DNA of 63,397 nt, filler included, from Octopus bimaculoides (lineage: Eukaryota): NCBI RefSeq assembly GCF_001194135.2. It is 7 parts of 7 records of this genome, joined end to end, with 100 filler letters (N's around TTAATTAATTAA, not from the genome) between each part and the next. Parts side by side here need not be neighbours in the genome. Positions count along the whole stretch, not along the records: positions 17,058 to 39,945 come from NC_069002.1; 6 more parts are not named here. One strand, given 5' to 3'. The notes beneath the pieces were generated by a model. It had not been told where the DNA came from and did not search any database. It worked only from the letters and a program-made list of their open reading frames with translations. The translations under genes were made by a program, and so were the position numbers. Of the stretch, positions 25,317 through 37,766 are shown piece after piece; position 1 is the stretch's first letter; each line of letters opens with the position of its first letter.

Positions 25317-26328
25317 NNNNNNNNNNNNNNNNNNNNNNNNNNNNNNNNNNNNNNNNNNNNNNNNNNNNNNNNNNNNNNNNNNNNNNNNNNNNNNNNNNNN
25401 NNNNNNNNNNNNNNNNNNNNNNNNNNNNNNNNNNNNNNNNNNNNNNNNNNNNNNNNNNNNNNNNNNNNNNNNNNNNNNNNNNNNNNNNNNNNNNNNNNNN
25501 NNNNNNNNNNNNNNNNNNNNNNNNNNNNNNNNNNNNNNNNNNNNNNNNNNNNNNNNNNNNNNNNNNNNNNNNNNNNNNNNNNNNNNNNNNNNNNNNNNNN
25601 NNNNNNNNNNNNNNNNNNNNNNNNNNNNNNNNNNNNNNNNNNNNNNNNNNNNNNNNNNNNNNNNNNNNNNNNNNNNNNNNNNNNNNNNNNNNNNNNNNNN
25701 NNNNNNNNNNNNNNNNNNNNNNNNNNNNNNNNNNNNNNNNNNNNNNNNNNNNNNNNNNNNNNNNNNNNNNNNNNNNNNNNNNNNNNNNNNNNNNNNNNNN
25801 NNNNNNNNNNNNNNNNNNNNNNNNNNNNNNNNNNNNNNNNNNNNNNNNNNNNNNNNNNNNNNNNNNNNNNNNNNNNNNNNNNNNNNNNNNNNNNNNNNNN
25901 NNNNNNNNNNNNNNNNNNNNNNNNNNNNNNNNNNNNNNNNNNNNNNNNNNNNNNNNNTGTTTATGTGTGTGTGTGTGTGTGTGTGTGTGTGAGTGTGTGT
26001 GTGTGTGTTCAATTATCAACACATTTACACATCATTTTGTAGAACCCTTCATTTGCATAAGTAAATATGAACACCGAATATTTTTACGGCTTGATTCACA
26101 GTCTTATTCTTTCTTGCAATGCTTTTTATTGGCAGAGGGAGACATAAGAGAAACGACATACTCTGTGCACAATGGCAATGGAAATGTGCTGAAGTGCCGA
26201 GGACACCAGATGAAACTTGCTGTGATGGCTTCTTCTGTAAATGTAACCCCTTCTGGAGAGCAAACTGTCGGTGCCACTCATTAAGTCTTTCACAAACGGC
26301 ACTTGAGGGCTGCCGAAAAAGAAAATGA
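19612..26328 (+). CDS. Agatoxin-like (8-Cys ICK/knottin) peptide precursor 1, spliced join(19612..19672,22413..22467,26136..26328), 102 aa
   Basis: Hand-spliced translation: MKIILGFSFCVLSYAMPLNN-D-VATVNKSQHVINRSLVE-R-GRHKR/NDILCAQWQWKCAEVPRTPDETCCDGFFCKCNPFWRANCRCHSLSLSQTALEGCRKRK*. All junctions are GT-AG with matching phases (1 then 2). CDS is 61+55+193=309 nt with no internal stop. Cys spacing C-x6-C-x10-CC-x4-C-x-C-x7-C-x-C. Confidence 0.85.
20440..21975 (-). mobile_element. Degenerate Tx1/L1-like LINE (APE to RT start) inside intron 1 of knottin gene 1
   Basis: Minus-strand remnants VVAIRET, DGKFVVLDL, APGP and SSLIGPE in the order expected for Tx1 ORF2; many stops and frameshifts. Confidence 0.6.
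22413..22467 (+). CDS. Knottin gene 1 coding exon 2 (propeptide DVATVNKSQHVINRSLVER)
   Basis: Acceptor gtttttatcccatttcag|AT and donor AG|GTAAAC; 55 nt, phase 1 in and phase 2 out, the same phases and AT.../...AG ends as exon 2 of the neighbouring paralog. Confidence 0.7.
23390..23800 (+). mobile_element. Penelope-like GIY-YIG fragment in intron 2 of knottin gene 1
   Basis: LCNC / CQLDSKCKTRNVVHKCKVT...YKG...R..NH matches the PLE zinc-finger plus GIY-YIG motif order. Confidence 0.65.
26136..26328 (+). CDS. Knottin gene 1 coding exon 3 (RHKR site plus mature 8-Cys ICK peptide)
   Basis: Acceptor gctttttattggcag|A in phase 2; coincides with ORF 26119..26328; CC-x4-CKCNPFWRANCRC resembles the arthropod agatoxin-like peptide core as I recall it (CC-x4-CRCNLWGxNCxC). 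Confidence 0.9.
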
Positions 26329-27689
26329 AAGAATCGATGTCTTCTTTTTTTTCTCATCCATTTCGTTTATCATTTTTTCTTTTCCTTCTTCCTACTTTGA
26401 TGAAGAAACAGTGTTCAAAACATCGATTGTTCTGTTGGCACGTTGACTTTTTTAATTTGTTCCTTGTTTTTCTCGTATAAATTTGCTATGGCGCGTTTTT
26501 GATACTGTCTTGCCTTGATAAAATATAATTATCTATATACTAATTAGAAAACTATAGCAGATTCAAACAAGAAATCCGCTGGATATTTATTTTATGTACT
26601 ACAATATATATTGTTCTTATTAAACCTCTAGATTCTACTTGATCTACAAATAAATAATTACAGTAATCTATAACGATCGTCTAATAATTTGTTTTCCGTT
26701 AATTTAATTTTTTAACTGTTCGCGTTGCAGATCTTCACTCTGTTACTGTAAAAAGTAATTGTTGTTGTTGTGACTTAACCTCTTAAGTTAAGCATGGTAA
26801 AGCTGACCACTGATGAATGCCTTTCCAGCAGTGGCCACTCTTCATTATTCAGACATTTTTCGGCTGCTATGTGAGACTTGAGGAGGATCTGCCTGCTATG
26901 TTTAGCAAGTTGAATGAACACTACTAACAAACACTCGACTTCTGTAGCCTTTTTATTGTTACAATCATAACACAAGAGATGCCATGCCCATCACACACTC
27001 ATTGCAGTAATGTTTTCTGTCATATTATAAAGATGTTTTTGTAGAGATATCAATTTTCTGCCTTTGCATTTTATCGTTGTAAACATGGTTTACAATTTTA
27101 TATTGAGAATATTACTCCTCAATAACTTTCCTGCTTCTAAGTATTGTCTTCGATTTTACCATTAATTTTCATACATGTCTAGGAAATAATTTCTAAAGCA
27201 TCAAATATCGATAAAAGTAAATTATCTCAAGCACTGTTTATCGTGATCAGGAGCTCAACAGATTTATCAGAAATAATTTAAGAGTCTCATATAAATTTCC
27301 GATCTTAGAGGGTAGTCTATATTAAAAGGATAACCTACTGTGCATATTTGCAACACAGAGAGATCCAGCAATGTTAAGTGCGCATACGACTTTTTTTATG
27401 GTAACTGATTATCCACGATTACTGAAGACAATCTTTACAAACTAAACTTTCTCGAAAAACACTGGATGTTTGTAAGTCATTCTACTACCATTTAAGGAAA
27501 CAGATAAGTCGTTAAATTATGTATCGAATTATTTACCTTATTAAGAAATATTTTCTTAGAATTTCTGATTTCTCTTTGCGTCGAAGGTACAAATTTTTAA
27601 CGAAGTAGCTTTTTTTATTTCAATAAACCGTCGCCAGAAAAGGCATTAAAGACACAAGTAACTCTATAGAACCTTACATGCAGCAATCA

Positions 27690-28300
27690 ATTACAAACAT
27701 TCTTAGCTGTTAAAACACTAACAAAACTAGATCAAGTGATATAACGTGGTTTAACCCCCCCCCCTATTAAACTTAGCTATTTCTAACATCCACATTAGAA
27801 TTCATTCTCACCCTAAGCTGTTGCTACAAAAATTTAAACAAAAACACATGAAATTTATCCTAGTATCCACTCCATCTTATTTTGTGCCAAACCAGAGAAT
27901 ATGCTGCCCCAAATGCTCAACTTTACCAACGATAGTAACACATACAAAGAAAGAAATTTGAACAGCATGAACCATAGTAACTGCTCTTTGGACGACAAAT
28001 GCATAGTTAATGACAGAATAATAATACATTTTTACCATTTATAATTGAACAGGAATATACGGGGTTCAACTTCTACACATCTTAAACGAAGCTGTAACCA
28101 ACACTCTCATACATTTAGAAATCGGAATACAAACAAATGGACCATCAATCTTGAAATTTATTCGAGTGTGAAATGGAATACTAACCTCACATGCGAACGG
28201 AATATTATTTTTGAAGTTAAATCACTGAATCTTGTAATTCGTACCCTAGAGAAATATTAGTACGCCTAGTAGAAATTTACTAAATAAGCATAATGAAACA
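27690..28300 (+). mobile_element. Penelope-like linker and GIY-YIG fragment
   Basis: DITWFNPP motif, CSLDDKC, and ORF 28045..28260 GSTSTHLKRSCNQHSHTFRN. Confidence 0.7.
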
Positions 28301-28528: not shown

Positions 28529-28915
28529 CCGGTGTTGGCACTCCGTCGCTTACGACGTCGAGGGCTCCAGTTGATCCGATCAACGGAACAGCCTGCTCGT
28601 GAAATTAACGTGCAAGTGGCTGAGCACTCCACAGACACGTGTACCCTTAACGTAGTTCTCGGGGGATATTCAGCGGGACACAGTGTGACAAGGCTGACCC
28701 TTTGAATTACAGGCACAACAGAAACAGGAAGTAAGAGTGAGAGAAAGTTGTGGTGAAAGAGTACAGCAGGGTTAGCCACCATCCCCTGCCGGAGCCTCGT
28801 GGAGCTTTAGGTGTTTTCGCTCAATAAACGCTCACAATGCCTGGTCTGGGAATCGAAACCACGATCCTATGACCGCGAGTCCGCTGCTCTAACCACTGGG
28901 CCATTGTGCCTCCAC
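28529..28915 (-). mobile_element. tRNA-derived SINE family B, full-length with 12-bp TSD
   Basis: Minus-strand head GGAGGCACAATGGCCCAGTGGTTAGAGCAGCGGACTCGCGG...GGTTTCGATTCC; CAGCTGTAAAGT is repeated directly at 28517-28528 and 28916-28927. Confidence 0.9.
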
Positions 28916-34448: not shown

Positions 34449-34512
34449 ATGAAAAGCCTCAGTGTCTTATTGTTTTGTGTATTCGTTTCATACACCTTCT
34501 CGGATAAAGAAA
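34449..34512 (+). CDS. Knottin gene 2 coding exon 1 (signal peptide MKSLSVLLFCVFVSYTFS-DKE)
   Basis: Acceptor catcaacag| at 34441, ATG at 34449 (7 nt of UTR, as for gene 1 with the 19604 acceptor), hydrophobic core, consensus donor A|GTAAGT at 34513. Confidence 0.8.
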
Positions 34513-35098: not shown

Positions 35099-37394
35099 GT
35101 ATGTAAGCCATGCAAAGTCAAGAACATTCTATTCGATAGGCCTGTACTTTGATTCCTTTTCGCCGTAACTAGGTAGCGGCGTACTACAAGGTGAATCGAG
35201 TGAGTGTAGACATTGCCGCTAATGCTTCTTCTAATGCTGCTGGTTCGCTAGAAGAATTTCATTGGTCAACGGTATCACAAGGTTCAACGCAGAGCTTTAG
35301 TGCTTGAGTCTGTTTCTTAACGTGGTCTCAACTCGAAACCGGCAGTGCATAGTGCCAGTGAAAAGCTACAAAAGACAAAATATGAAACACATCACTTTTA
35401 ATGATAATAATTCAATTGTTTATGATATTGGTAATATCGACATATATCAAGATGAATGCTACATTCAGCTCTTTCGAATACAGTAAATGTACGACAGCTA
35501 CTGATTTTGTCTGAAAGAATGTCAAGCAAAATGCAACTGGTGTTTAAAAATTAATTAAATTAAATTACTTAAAAATTATCCTAAAAATACGATACTAATT
35601 ATTTAACAGTATTTCTCCAGGGAGTCTCTAAAGTTTGTGATATTCATCATGTGTTATTCAGGACTAGCGAAAATATCATATTTATCTCATACATTGGGAT
35701 TAAATTTACTATCGTTTATGTCTAAAATAGCCATCATTACAGTGATCAGCTATATAAACTGTAGGTGAGAGAAAATGTGAGTTCCAGTCATCACGACGTT
35801 ACCTCTTTTTCAGATTATATAATTATAAGTAAATTATCCTCTATTTAATGAAATGTCTGCTGAGCGCTACATGGGTCTTTTGTTTAAGTCTAATTTCTCT
35901 TTCAGATGTTACTCACACAGGAACTGTTGTAAGTTTCACTATAGTGACTAAAAGGTAAGAACTACATACCTGCATCTCATATTTATTTAATTTACTATTG
36001 GCAAAGAGGTAAGACGGCGAATTGGCAGAAACACTAGCACGCCGGACGAAATGCTTAAGAGTATTTCGTCTACCGCTACGTTCTCAGTTCAAATTCTGCC
36101 GAGGTCGACTTTGCCTTTCACCTTTCTTTTCGGGAGTCAATAAATTAAGTACCAGTTGCGTACTGGGGTCAATCTAATCGACTGGCCCCGGCCCCCTGCC
36201 TAGAGTAGAAAAGAGTATTGGCAAAGCGGTAAACTGGCAGAATCATTAGAATAGGTAGGACCATTTCTTCCAGGTTTCGGGTCGATGAAATACCAGTTGA
36301 GAATTAGCGTCGATTTGGACTCTCCATCAAGGTTCCAGGTCTTATGCCTATTATAGAAAGGTTATTAGTATTGGCGTAATTATATTCTGTGACTCTTTCT
36401 AAATTATACTTTTTATTCCTTTTATTTGTTTCAGTCATTTGACTGCGGCCATGCTAGAGCACCGCCTTTAGTCGAACGAATCGACCTCAGGACTTATCAA
36501 CAACTACCATTTCTTTCTCTACTCTCCAAAAAGGAACCACCTGACCATCATGTTTCTAAAACTACCCACCCTTTATCTTCCATTCGTTTGGGTATTTCAG
36601 CTACTGTTAATGATATCAAATTTACCTTCAGCTCGTGTGTCGTGTCTTTCTACATATATTTACTCAAATTTCATTAGAATTATACATGTTTAATTCTGTC
36701 GTATAGCGCAAAGGCTTTCCGTCTATACAGACACTTGTTTCATTTAATTTCTGTTTATTTATTTCATTCGTGCCTTGATACCTACCTTTTATATATTTTC
36801 CTGTCCTTCCCATAACTCGTCCTTTTTATCATTCGCTCTTGAGACTCACGTCTTGCTTTCTATTTGTCACATTCTGTCCTTCATTCTTACTCTTTTGTAC
36901 TCCAGCAGCATTTTAGTGTTGATGCCAACCAATAGAATTATACTATTGTTAAGTTTTCGAATTTTTGGTCAGTATCTGAAGAGATGACATGTCCACAATC
37001 TTTGTGTGTTACTTACTGTTTTCCTTATGTTCTTTCTTCATTTTCCTGTGGCACGTTTTACTATATTCATACATTCACACATATATAACTTAACTAGCAA
37101 CCCTTCGGTTACGACGACGAGGGTTCCAGTTGACCCGATCAACAGAAAAGCTTGATCGTGAAATTAACGTGCAAATGGTTGGGCACTCCACAGTCGCACG
37201 TGTTTCTGGAGAAATTGAGCGTGACAGAAAATGTAACAAAGCAAGGCTGTCAATCAAAATACAAATACAAGTACTGCTAATTTTTGCCAGCTGAGCGCGG
37301 GCTTGAGCCTTGCTCGAGGACACAACCTGCCGCCGGGAGTCGAACTGAGGACCTTAAGATCGCGAACAGAATACCCTAGCCAGTAACCATGTGC

Positions 37395-37429
<35 letters not shown>

Positions 37430-37766
37430 NNNNNNNNNNNNNNNNNNNNNNNNNNNNNNNNNNNNNNNNNNNNNNNNNNNNNNNNNNNNNNNNNNNNNNN
37501 NNNNNNNNNNNNNNNNNNNNNNNNNNNNNNNNNNNNNNNNNNNNNNNNNNNNNNNNNNNNNNNNNNNNNNNNNNNNNNNNNNNNNNNNNNNNNNNNNNNN
37601 NNNNNNNNNNNNNNNNNNNNNNNNNNNNNNNNNNNNNNNNNNNNNNNNNNNNNNNNNNNNNNNNNNNNNNNNNNNNNNNNNNNNNNNNNNNNNNNNNNNN
37701 NNNNNNNNNNNNNNNNNNNNNNNNNNNNNNNNNNNNNNNNNNNNNNNNNNNNNNNNNNNNNNNNNN

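What the first reader, a model, noticed from the sequence alone, without database searches (positions are those of the whole stretch)
26136..26328. Gene 1 mature peptide closely resembles agatoxin-like neuropeptides and is released by an RHKR site
Seen: GRHKR immediately precedes NDILCAQWQWKCAEVPRTPDETCCDGFFCKCNPFWRANCRCH. Established: R-X-K-R is the furin/prohormone-convertase consensus. The CxCN-x-W-x-xNCRC segment matches my recollection of the insect agatoxin-like peptide core. Inference: this is the more ancestral, processed and secreted member (58-aa product), with an aromatic patch (WQW, FF, FW) of the kind that membrane-partitioning gating modifiers use.
Basis: partly seen in the sequence, partly recalled or inferred. 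Interest (0 to 1): 0.8.

Follow-up and report, generated by a model that had tools for sequence, protein, structure and literature searches.

The report
Octopus agatoxin-like (CCWamide-family) peptide gene
The flagged stretch is the last exon of a real three-exon Octopus bimaculoides gene that encodes a secreted, knotted, cysteine-rich peptide; it is a divergent extra copy of the known CCWamide/agatoxin-like neuropeptide family, and nobody yet knows its function.

Summary
Window 26136-26328 (+) is a complete terminal exon that reads (R)GRHKR-NDILCAQWQWKCAEVPRTPDETCCDGFFCKCNPFWRANCRCHSLSLSQTALEGCRKRK-stop. It is 100% identical to RefSeq "uncharacterized protein LOC128250511" of Octopus bimaculoides.

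All coding exons lie in the piece:
- 19605-19672: ATG at 19612, signal peptide MKIILGFSFCVLSYA
- 22413-22467: propeptide
- 26136-26328: the flagged exon

Membership of the CCWamide/agatoxin-like peptide (ALP) family is well supported:
- It has the eight-Cys framework.
- It scores 41 bits on an HMM of 34 published members, against a maximum of 33 for 1000 Cys-preserving shuffles.
- Its introns are phase 1 then phase 2, and the second splits an Arg codon. This is the published gene-structure hallmark of the family.

It is not the canonical or "ancestral" member. Octopus has a separate conserved CCWamide ending in LWG. This copy lacks the aromatic-amide C-terminus and carries a ninth Cys in a flexible tail, as does its paralogue LOC128250540. 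After removal of RKRK the product is probably 54 aa, not 58.

Identity with that paralogue falls from signal peptide to mature peptide. That pattern fits fast-evolving secreted peptides. The target and role (neuropeptide or toxin-like) remain untested.

Verdict: a new, uncharacterised member of a known kind, of moderate interest.

The parts
19605..19672 (+). First coding exon of gene 1 (LOC128250511). ATG at 19612. Signal peptide MKIILGFSFCVLSYA at 19612-19656, then MPLNN plus 1 base. The donor G|gtaggt gives a phase-1 intron.
   Evidence: The RefSeq isoforms X1-X3 all join different upstream 5' exons to this acceptor, which fixes the exon start at 19605. Paralogues begin MKIILGVYFCALSYA and MKTIIAFCFCFCVLISYA.
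22413..22467 (+). Second coding exon: propeptide (D)VATVNKSQHVINRSLVE plus AG. The donor AG|gtaaac gives a phase-2 intron that splits an Arg codon (AG|A).
   Evidence: Joining the three exons gives a 309-nt ORF identical to residues 23-124 of P0001.
26136..26328 (+). Terminal coding exon, which is the finding. Its first base A completes the Arg codon. Then come GRHKR, the Cys-rich peptide, RKRK and the TGA stop.
26140..26151 (+). R-H-K-R predicted convertase site. With the split-codon Arg and the Gly before it, the context is R-G-R-H-K-R, so Arg occupies P6 and P4, Lys P2 and Arg P1.
   Evidence: Sequence. That R-X-K/R-R is the furin/PC consensus is established knowledge. Cleavage was not demonstrated.
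26152..26313 (+). Predicted mature peptide of 54 aa (NDILC...LEGC). It has an 8-Cys knottin framework and a 9th Cys at the C-terminus.
   Evidence: HMM 41.0 bits. Alignment A1. AF2 model with a beta-hairpin at residues 27-31/39-43 and a tail at 47-54 with pLDDT below 50. Reduced mass 6187 Da and pI 5.6.
26314..26325 (+). C-terminal RKRK, probably trimmed by a carboxypeptidase.
   Evidence: Inference. The paralogue P0003 ends at the aligned ...LQGC.
26619..26654 (+). Polyadenylation-signal-like hexamers (ATTAAA at 26619, AATAAA at 26649), about 300 nt after the stop codon.
   Evidence: Motif match only.
37906..38120 (+). Terminal exon of a second, much more diverged paralogue (gene 2): (x)NTVKGIFNQCTKEYCYLHELIPRRSCCLGLRCVCKKIRHNCWCSSQ... 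It has the same phase-2 acceptor.
   Evidence: HMM only 14-15 bits, not above its Cys-preserving shuffles.
34449..34512 (+). Candidate first coding exon of gene 2: MKSLSVLLFCVFVSYTFSDKE plus 1 base, with a strong phase-1 donor AAA|GTAAGT. An acceptor lies 7 nt before the ATG, as in gene 1.
   Evidence: Weak tblastn similarity to the P0004 signal peptide. Tentative.

Best explanation
Window 26136-26328 is the last of three coding exons of Octopus bimaculoides LOC128250511. The gene encodes a 102-aa secretory prepropeptide of the CCWamide/agatoxin-like peptide (ALP) family.

Proposed biosynthesis:
1. The signal peptide MKIILGFSFCVLSYA is removed. This is inferred from the hydrophobic core and the small residues S and A at positions -3 and -1.
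2. The propeptide MPLNN...SLVERGRHKR is removed by a furin/prohormone convertase cutting after R-G-R-H-K-R (inferred).
3. The C-terminal RKRK is trimmed (inferred from the paralogue's end).
4. The 54-aa product folds as an inhibitor-cystine-knot with four disulfides. The pairing C1-C4, C2-C5, C3-C8, C6-C7 is inferred by homology to solved omega- and mu-agatoxins.
5. A ninth Cys is left in a flexible C-terminal tail, either free or forming an intermolecular disulfide (speculative).

Proposed action: an extracellular ligand. The conserved hairpin loop between Cys6 and Cys7 (N-P-F-W-R-A-N) is the likely recognition surface.

Place in the family: the gene is a lineage-restricted, fast-diverging paralogue. 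It groups with LOC128250540, LOC106867751 and gene 2 of this window, which share the FC-x-L-SYA-type signal peptide. It is not the canonical octopus CCWamide. Its target is unknown, as is the receptor for the whole family.
For: Identity and organism:
- 100% match over all 63 query residues.
- XP_052831630.1 and isoforms, O. bimaculoides.

Gene model:
- All splice sites are GT-AG.
- The joined ORF is 309 nt.
- Intron phases are 1 then 2, and intron 2 splits an Arg codon (AG|A).

Published family hallmarks (Thiel et al. 2021, PMC8557429):
- A conserved phase-2 intron between the second and third nucleotide of a basic codon.
- Lottia, Notospermus and Centruroides genes show phase 1 then phase 2.

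Sequence:
- The HMM was built from 34 published CCWamide/ALP peptides.
- Gene 1 scores 41.0 bits. The 1000 Cys-preserving shuffles average 9.6 +/- 5.5 with a maximum of 33.3.
- Leave-one-out scores of accepted members range from 27.9 to 68.0, and arthropod ALPs from 42 to 48.
- In alignment A1 the 8 Cys are invariant. Gene 1 also has W at Cys1+3, K-C-N, an aromatic residue plus W, and N-C-R-C.
- Other knottins score lower on the family profile: the best PDB toxin reaches 29 bits, omega-Aga-IVB 21, ASIP 16 and AgRP 14.

Structure:
- The AF2 model has a hairpin and a disordered tail.
- The top fold matches are all spider knottins and AgRP, but none is significant.

Paralogue comparison with P0003:
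- Signal peptide 80% identical, propeptide 54%, mature peptide 37% (24% when Cys are excluded).
- The ninth Cys is conserved.
Against: - The family's usual amidated aromatic C-terminus (W/F/Y-Gly) is absent, and there is an odd ninth Cys.
- Pfam Toxin_9 scores 19.1 bits, below its 21.3 cutoff. The canonical octopus CCWamide (23.5) and P0004 (25.1) both pass.
- The NJ tree has no supported node placing gene 1. The best is 44% bootstrap with P0004.
- No orthologue in another species was seen. Clustering of the library at 50% identity and poor annotation of small genes could hide one.
- No expression, peptide or cleavage data were available. The signal-peptide and convertase steps are predictions.
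Confidence: 0.82

Rival explanations
1. It is a member of the same family by descent but has been recruited as an exocrine or toxin-like peptide. Examples would be a salivary or venom peptide, or another fast-evolving secreted role, acting on prey ion channels rather than as an endogenous neuropeptide. This is.
For: - Identity with the paralogue falls from signal peptide to mature peptide: 80%, 54%, 37%, and 24% without Cys. This is the pattern of conotoxin and spider-toxin superfamilies.
- There is a local paralogue (gene 2, 11.6 kb downstream). LOC128250540 was seen on a contig of the same length, 37.7 Mb, and so probably the same one.
- The peptide lacks C-terminal amidation, which is typical of neuropeptides.
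- ALPs were recruited into spider venom.
- The nearest solved sequence relatives of the family profile are spider toxins.
- Octopuses are venomous (general knowledge).
Against: - No expression or venom-proteome evidence was found. Literature searches linking agatoxin or CCWamide to cephalopod salivary glands gave nothing relevant.
- The trimmed peptide is slightly acidic, with net charge -1 and pI 5.6. Most membrane-partitioning gating modifiers are cationic (my own knowledge).
Confidence: 0.3
2. It is an invertebrate member of the Agouti/AgRP family. UniProt names the paralogue A0A0L8G4S4 an 'Agouti domain-containing protein'. On this reading the C-terminal Cys would correspond to the tenth agouti Cys.
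For: - The UniProt name of P0003.
- Nine of the ten agouti Cys positions can be matched, including a Cys at the end of a C-terminal tail.
- AgRP 1HYK is rank 7 in the fold search.
- A nemertean CCWamide in the Thiel et al. supplement (Cerebratulus DN64514) has a full 10-Cys spacing, CC-x2-C-x2-C-x-C-x6-C-x-C-x6-C.
Against: - Pfam Agouti was not reported for gene 1 or P0003 even at E<=10.
- A profile of gene 1 plus P0003 finds no ASIP or AgRP chain in the PDB at E<=10.
- The family profile scores ASIP at 15.7 and AgRP at 13.8 bits, below several spider toxins.
- The fifth agouti Cys, which pairs with the tenth, is missing.
- There is no R-F-F triplet in the hairpin loop.
- The fold match has E=3.8.
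Confidence: 0.05
3. It is an unrelated knottin that converged on the same cysteine framework, so the resemblance to ALPs comes only from the Cys pattern.
For: - The framework C-x6-C-xn-CC-x4-C-x-C-xn-C-x-C is common among spider toxins.
- Cys-preserving shuffles can reach 33 bits.
- Pfam Toxin_9 is below its threshold.
Against: - None of 1000 Cys-preserving shuffles reaches 41 bits.
- Non-Cys consensus residues are shared.
- The intron phases and the split basic codon match the published family signature.
- The pre-Cys segment RGRHKRNDILC aligns without gaps to RGKSKSHKNSC of P0004. P0004 scores 52.5 bits and passes Pfam Toxin_9.
Confidence: 0.06
4. It is a decaying or non-functional duplicate that only gene-prediction software treats as a gene.
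For: - It is annotated only as 'uncharacterized' with XP_ (predicted) accessions.
- No orthologue was found.
- It has an odd number of Cys.
- Possible exon relics lie nearby.
Against: - The ORF is intact across three exons with canonical splice sites.
- The start codon has A at position -3, a good context.
- All 8 framework Cys and the family consensus residues are retained.
- The ninth Cys and the H-x-x-S-L...G-C tail are conserved in the paralogue.
- Three RefSeq isoforms with alternative 5' exons suggest transcript support. I could not inspect that evidence.
Confidence: 0.05

Closest known systems
Spiralian CCWamide neuropeptide precursors (for example the Octopus vulgaris, Lottia gigantea, Crassostrea and Phoronis CCWamides; Thiel et al. 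2021, PMC8557429)
   Same: - Short precursor laid out as signal peptide, non-conserved propeptide, basic site, then a C-terminal 8-Cys peptide.
- Three coding exons with phase-1 then phase-2 introns, the second splitting a basic codon.
- Conserved W at Cys1+3, K/R-C-N, an aromatic residue between Cys6 and Cys7, and N-C-R-C.
- The Phoronis form CKCGPFWFNNCRC has the same one-residue-longer loop as CKCNPFWRANCRC.
   Different: - No C-terminal aromatic-Gly amidation signal.
- A 13-residue tail ending in a ninth Cys, followed by RKRK.
- An extra RHKR site five residues after the family-conserved split-codon Arg.
- It is a second-tier paralogue. The canonical octopus orthologue is a different gene.
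Arthropod agatoxin-like peptides / U8-agatoxin-Ao1a (Sturm et al. 2016, as cited)
   Same: Homologous 8-Cys knottin core. The HMM score is comparable with that of the ALPs themselves (41 against 42-48 bits). The intron phases are the same.
   Different: - ALPs have a shorter Cys2-Cys3 loop (6 residues against 10).
- ALPs have CRCNLWGxNCRC without the extra residue.
- ALPs have the conserved tail QRxGLFQKW-amide.
- No function or receptor is known for either.
Octopus bimaculoides LOC128250540 (UniProt A0A0L8G4S4) and LOC106867751
   Same: The closest relatives found. They share the FC-x-L-SYA signal peptide. LOC128250540 also shares the ninth Cys and the tail CRCH..SL...L-x-GC.
   Different: - LOC128250540 has only a monobasic E-E-R site and ends at GC without RKRK.
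- LOC106867751 has 8 Cys, ends in TLG, has a much longer propeptide, and is identical in O. vulgaris.
Spider knottin toxins with four disulfides (omega-agatoxin IVA/IVB, mu-agatoxin-I, delta-palutoxins, Tbo-IT2, mu-hexatoxin-Mg2a; Pfam Toxin_9 and Toxin_7)
   Same: The same cysteine framework and probably the same fold.
   Different: - Lower profile scores. Pfam Toxin_9 is sub-threshold for gene 1 (19.1 against a cutoff of 21.3).
- No evidence that gene 1 acts on channels.

Membership tests
CCWamide / agatoxin-like peptide (ALP) family | Short secretory precursor with the signal peptide encoded in the first coding exon | tested here: met
   MKIILGFSFCVLSYA lies in exon 19605-19672, with a hydrophobic core and S at -3 and A at -1. 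It is conserved in the paralogues. No SignalP run was possible.
CCWamide / agatoxin-like peptide (ALP) family | Non-conserved propeptide separated from a C-terminal mature peptide by a basic cleavage site, with the mature peptide encoded in the last exon | tested here: met
   The propeptide ends ...SLVE-R-G-R-H-K-R. The Cys-rich peptide lies wholly in exon 26136-26328. Cleavage itself was not tested.
CCWamide / agatoxin-like peptide (ALP) family | Conserved intron in phase 2, between the second and third nucleotide of a basic-residue codon just before the mature peptide, preceded by a phase-1 intron | tested here: met
   The donor GAAAG|gtaaac and acceptor ggcag|AGGG split AG|A, an Arg codon. 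The first intron is phase 1. This matches Thiel et al. 2021.
CCWamide / agatoxin-like peptide (ALP) family | Eight conserved Cys in the arrangement C-x6-C-xn-CC-x4(-6)-C-x-C-x6/7-C-x-C | tested here: met
   The spacing is 6,10,0,4,1,7,1. All eight align to the invariant columns of A1. There is an additional ninth Cys.
CCWamide / agatoxin-like peptide (ALP) family | Aromatic residue between Cys6 and Cys7 | tested here: met
   The loop N-P-F-W-R-A-N. The W aligns with the family's conserved W.
CCWamide / agatoxin-like peptide (ALP) family | Amidated aromatic residue at the C-terminus (W/F/Y-Gly, with or without basic residues) | tested here: not met
   The tail is HSLSLSQTALEGCRKRK, with no aromatic-Gly. 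Thiel et al. describe this feature but not as universal. Several accepted members also lack it (Notospermus CCWa-like 3, Siphonaria, Solemya).
CCWamide / agatoxin-like peptide (ALP) family | Sequence similarity beyond the Cys framework | tested here: met
   41.0 bits against Cys-preserving shuffles with a maximum of 33.3 (0 of 1000). This falls within the leave-one-out range of members, 27.9-68.0.
CCWamide / agatoxin-like peptide (ALP) family | Expression in neurons or neuroendocrine cells | not testable with these tools
   No expression data were available. Canonical CCWamide is neuronal in the gastropod Berghia.
Pfam PF02819 Toxin_9 (spider toxin knottins) | Score at or above the gathering threshold of 21.3 bits | tested here: not met
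   Gene 1 precursor scores 19.1 bits, E=0.0016. The canonical O. vulgaris CCWamide scores 23.5 and P0004 scores 25.1, and both pass.
Agouti / AgRP domain | Ten Cys with CC-x2-C-x2-C-x-C spacing, an R-F-F loop, and a match to the Agouti profile | tested here: not met
   Only 9 Cys, with the fifth agouti Cys missing. There is no RFF. No Pfam Agouti hit. No ASIP or AgRP hit with the gene 1 plus P0003 profile.

The most novel reading that the evidence does not exclude
Octopus carries a lineage-specific, rapidly diversifying branch of the CCWamide/ALP family: gene 1, LOC128250540 and gene 2. The amidated neuropeptide C-terminus has been replaced by a flexible tail ending in an unpaired Cys. The products would then be disulfide-linked knottin dimers, homo- or heterodimeric, used as exocrine or venom-like effectors. 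That would be a second, independent neuropeptide-to-toxin recruitment of this family outside spiders. A further possibility is that the tail Cys is homologous to the tenth Cys of agouti domains, which would link the protostome CCWamides to the agouti framework.
Probability: 0.12. Interest if true: 0.7.

Novelty: new member of a known kind. Interest (0 to 1): 0.38.

Why it matters
CCWamide/ALP is an ancient protostome peptide family. Its receptor and function were still unknown in a 2026 review. Spiders turned a member of this family into a venom component.

A cluster of divergent octopus paralogues with a conserved signal peptide, a hypervariable mature peptide and an odd cysteine offers a natural experiment. 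It shows how such a peptide diversifies in a venomous mollusc with a large brain. It also gives concrete peptides to look for by mass spectrometry and to use as probes for the unknown receptor or channel target.

On present evidence, though, this is mainly a correct annotation of a database entry labelled 'uncharacterized protein'. It is not a new kind of system.

Tried and rejected
- Word-indexed homologue searches were nearly blind for this short peptide. One search gave no candidates. One search found only the gene itself. One search, using a 33-sequence profile, returned 3 hits. The exhaustive scan was what identified the gene.
- The look-up of encoding contigs found no record for P0001 or P0003. 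I therefore could not examine synteny, the chromosome-level locus or the position of LOC128250540.
- Foldseek against the PDB gave only non-significant hits with E>=1. They fit a knottin but prove nothing. The AF2 model is of moderate quality (pLDDT 67.8) and I could not read disulfide pairings from it.
- A neighbour-joining tree of the 46-column core has no supported placement for gene 1 (bootstrap <=44%). I use it only to say that the 'ancestral' claim is unsupported.
- blastn of the gene 1 exons against the rest of the piece found no nucleotide-level duplicates. Gene 2 is too diverged to map its exons by DNA similarity. I found its exon 1 with a signal-peptide and donor scan. Its exon 2 remains uncertain. 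The best candidate is 35906-35954, and it may lie in the N gap at 37430-37766.
- The Agouti reading suggested by the UniProt name was tested and rejected.
- Literature searches for the LOC, XP and UniProt identifiers, and for CCWamide or agatoxin together with octopus, cephalopod or salivary gland, found no description of these paralogues.
- I considered the alternative acceptor at 26100|26101, which would make VLFFLAMLFIG part of a signal peptide. I rejected it because the RefSeq product and the phase shared with gene 2 fix the acceptor at 26135|26136.
Full report
**1. What is in the sequence**

The piece (17058-39945) is eukaryotic. It is 37% G+C, full of di- and tetranucleotide microsatellites, and has three assembly gaps.

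Reading from 26137 gives GRHKRNDILCAQWQWKCAEVPRTPDETCCDGFFCKCNPFWRANCRCHSLSLSQTALEGCRKRK and then TGA. Position 26136 is the first base after a polypyrimidine tract and CAG acceptor. The exon has nine cysteines, spaced 6,10,0,4,1,7,1,12.

**2. Identity of the gene**

The word-indexed protein search found nothing. An exhaustive HMMER scan of 1.84 billion representative proteins found four hits:
- a 124-aa protein identical over all 63 query residues (E=1.3e-38);
- two weaker, relevant proteins, P0003 and P0004;
- one low-complexity false friend, P0002.

The exact-sequence look-up names these proteins:
- The identical one is XP_052831630.1, [quoted passage not shown].
- Isoforms X1 and X3 differ only in what precedes MKIIL.
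- P0003/P0007 is LOC128250540. UniProt calls it A0A0L8G4S4, "Agouti domain-containing protein".
- P0004 is LOC106867751. Its sequence is identical in O. vulgaris.

**3. Gene model in the window**

The three coding pieces of the RefSeq protein map as follows:

| Exon | Coordinates | Content | Junction |
|---|---|---|---|
| A | 19605-19672 | ATG at 19612; MKIILGFSFCVLSYAMPLNN plus G | donor G\|gtaggt, phase 1 |
| B | 22413-22467 | AT, then VATVNKSQHVINRSLVE, then AG | donor AG\|gtaaac, phase 2 |
| C | 26136-26328 | A, then GRHKR... | terminal exon |

- All junctions are GT-AG. The joined ORF is 309 nt, encoding 102 aa.
- The split codon is AG|A, which is Arg.
- The three RefSeq isoforms splice different upstream exons onto the acceptor at 19604|19605. 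Those exons are not in this piece.
- The N-terminal extensions are not conserved between isoforms or paralogues, whereas MKIIL... is. ATG 19612, with A at -3, is therefore the likely true start. This is an inference.
- Intron 2 contains the N gap at 25317-25957, so its length of about 3.7 kb is approximate.

**4. Family membership**

Thiel et al. [quoted passage not shown] They list these shared characters:
- a short precursor laid out as signal peptide, non-conserved peptide, basic site, then a C-terminal peptide with eight Cys;
- an aromatic residue between Cys6 and Cys7;
- an amidated aromatic C-terminus;
- a conserved phase-2 intron between nucleotides 2 and 3 of a basic codon.

Their supplement shows phase 1 then phase 2 for Lottia, Notospermus and Centruroides.

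Gene 1 meets every one of these except the C-terminal amide.

The scores are:

| Sequence | Bits |
|---|---|
| Gene 1 | 41.0 |
| 1000 shuffles of gene 1 with Cys fixed | 9.6 +/- 5.5, max 33.3 |
| Accepted members, leave-one-out | 27.9-68.0 |
| Arthropod ALPs, leave-one-out | 42-48 |
| Canonical O. vulgaris CCWamide, leave-one-out | 62 |
| P0004 | 52.5 |
| P0003 | 39.2 |
| Gene 2 | 15.0 (14.0) |

In the 33-sequence alignment A1 the eight Cys are invariant. Gene 1 also carries the consensus W at Cys1+3, K-C-N, the loop W and N-C-R-C. Its loop CKCNPFWRANCRC is one residue longer than the arthropod CRCNLWGTNCRC. It closely matches the Phoronis form CKCGPFWFNNCRC.

The family profile scores unrelated solved knottins lower: Tbo-IT2 29.3, Mg2a 22, omega-Aga-IVB 21.4, ASIP 15.7 and AgRP 13.8.

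Pfam Toxin_9 detects the canonical octopus CCWamide (23.5 bits) and P0004 (25.1 bits) above its 21.3 cutoff. Gene 1 reaches only 19.1, which is consistent with a divergent member.

**5. Structure**

AF2 run on a five-sequence alignment gives a moderate model with pLDDT 67.8. It shows the beta-hairpin expected of a knottin (27-31/39-43) and a low-confidence tail at 47-54 that holds the ninth Cys.

The top Foldseek hits are spider knottins (Hm-3, PcTx1, J-ACTX) and AgRP. All have E>=1, so this is compatible with a knottin but is not evidence on its own.

**6.

- *"More ancestral".* Octopus has a separate canonical CCWamide (...CKCNLWMQNCRCVNKLWGG). Its Cys5-Cys8 core CKCNLWMQNC is identical to that of chiton, aplacophoran and scallop peptides. 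Gene 1, P0003, P0004 and the candidate gene 2 exon 1 share a different signal peptide type (FC-x-L/F-x-SYA/T) and look like a separate paralogue group. The NJ tree is unresolved (<=44% bootstrap). Gene 1 is merely less diverged than gene 2.
- *"58-aa product".* P0003 ends at the aligned ...LQGC. Trimming RKRK to give a 54-aa peptide ending ...LEGC is therefore the more likely outcome.
- *The N-terminus.* The family-conserved site is the split-codon Arg (VER|G). RHKR lies five residues further on and forms R-G-R-H-K-R, a stronger convertase motif. NDILC is the best guess, but GRHKRNDILC is possible. P0004 aligns without gaps here (RGKSKSHKNSC) and lacks the dibasic pair. P0003 has only E-E-R.
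- *The aromatic patch.* Half of it lies at family-conserved positions. The trimmed peptide has net charge -1.

**7. How it probably works, and the main alternative**

The shown and inferred steps are listed under the best explanation. In brief, this is a secreted, convertase-processed knottin ligand that presents the conserved Cys6-Cys7 hairpin.

Identity with P0003 is 80% in the signal peptide, 54% in the propeptide and 37% in the mature peptide, or 24% when Cys are excluded. This is the signature of fast-diversifying secreted peptide superfamilies. Together with the missing amide and the local duplicate, it keeps an exocrine or toxin-like role alive. I put that at about 0.3, as a sub-hypothesis within family membership.

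Canonical CCWamide is broadly neuronal in a gastropod. The receptor and function of the whole family are unknown.

The conserved odd Cys suggests either an intermolecular disulfide or a free thiol. This is speculation that mass spectrometry can test.

**8. The Agouti label**

The UniProt name for the paralogue is not supported:
- There is no Pfam Agouti hit.
- A profile of gene 1 plus P0003 finds no ASIP or AgRP chain in the PDB.
- The fifth agouti Cys and the RFF loop are absent.

**9. Novelty**

The family, its protostome-wide distribution and a cephalopod canonical member are published. This gene exists in RefSeq as "uncharacterized". I found no paper that mentions it or its paralogues.

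It is a new, divergent member of a known kind. Its unusual features are the nine-Cys tail without an amide and the polybasic end.

Noticed in passing
window 37906-38120 (+), with candidate first exon at 34449-34512 (+): A second paralogue (gene 2) lies 11.6 kb downstream on the same strand. Its last exon has the same phase-2 acceptor and 8 Cys (C-x4-C-x10-CC-x4-C-x-C-x6-C-x-C), but no family residues beyond Cys and no basic site. It also has a long hydrophobic tail (SSQNVIHVMNNGMIQTVASILSSLAILY). The candidate signal-peptide exon MKSLSVLLFCVFVSYTFSDKE has a phase-1 GTAAGT donor and an acceptor 7 nt before the ATG, as in gene 1. The middle exon was not identified. The best candidate is 35906-35954, or it may lie in the N gap at 37430-37766. 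It is unclear whether this is a functional gene or a pseudogene.
   Followed up: partly
window 27925-28006 (-) and 38628-38763 (-): Two minus-strand open stretches carry a CC-x4/5-C-x-C motif (LCICRPKSSYYGSCCSNFFLCMCYYRW and TTRPTTICCNNIECHCNI...). They lie 1.6 kb and 0.6 kb downstream of the last exons of gene 1 and gene 2. They have weak tblastn similarity to P0007 and P0004 (E=0.034 and 0.014). The piece has 4 such motifs against about 0.2 expected. They may be relics of inverted exon duplications.
   Followed up: partly
window 19605 (acceptor); upstream 5' exons lie outside the piece: RefSeq isoforms X1, X2 and X3 attach three different upstream exons. Each contributes a non-conserved in-frame N-terminal extension (MYIYIHIYLY..., MMLCEIRY..., MCR) before the signal peptide. 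One of these is translated microsatellite. They look like 5'-UTR exons over-extended by longest-ORF annotation.
   Followed up: partly
window 28538-28634 and 37097-37193 (+): A dispersed 97-nt repeat, 86% identical between its two copies. It underlies two similar minus-strand ORFs (...CTLISR..SVDR[IV]NW.PRRR.RR...). It is probably a SINE-like element. No tRNA was detected by ARAGORN.
   Followed up: partly
window 17058-17890: A 17-bp minisatellite (TTACCAGTTCGCCTCCT, with higher-order periods of 67 and 84) lies on both sides of the N gap at 17304-17662. All three assembly gaps are flanked by simple repeats ((TG)n, (AC)n or (TA)n). This explains why the draft assembly broke there.
   Followed up: no
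literature and PDB, not the window: A nemertean CCWamide in the Thiel et al. supplement (Cerebratulus DN64514...CCNDCYSCVCKFPGSNCTCKKRMFSCWGKR) has the extra Cys pair in the agouti-like spacing CC-x2-C-x2-C-x-C, with 10 Cys in all. The part of the spider toxin mu-hexatoxin-Mg2a shown has the same CC-x2-C-x2-C-x-C spacing. The agouti-type framework has therefore arisen within, or is shared with, the CCWamide/ALP family. This may be why an automatic rule labelled the octopus paralogue 'Agouti domain'.
   Followed up: no
window 22428-22436 and 22449-22457 (+): The propeptide carries two N-X-S sequons (NKS and NRS) that are not conserved in the paralogue P0003. It is unknown whether they are glycosylated.
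   Followed up: no
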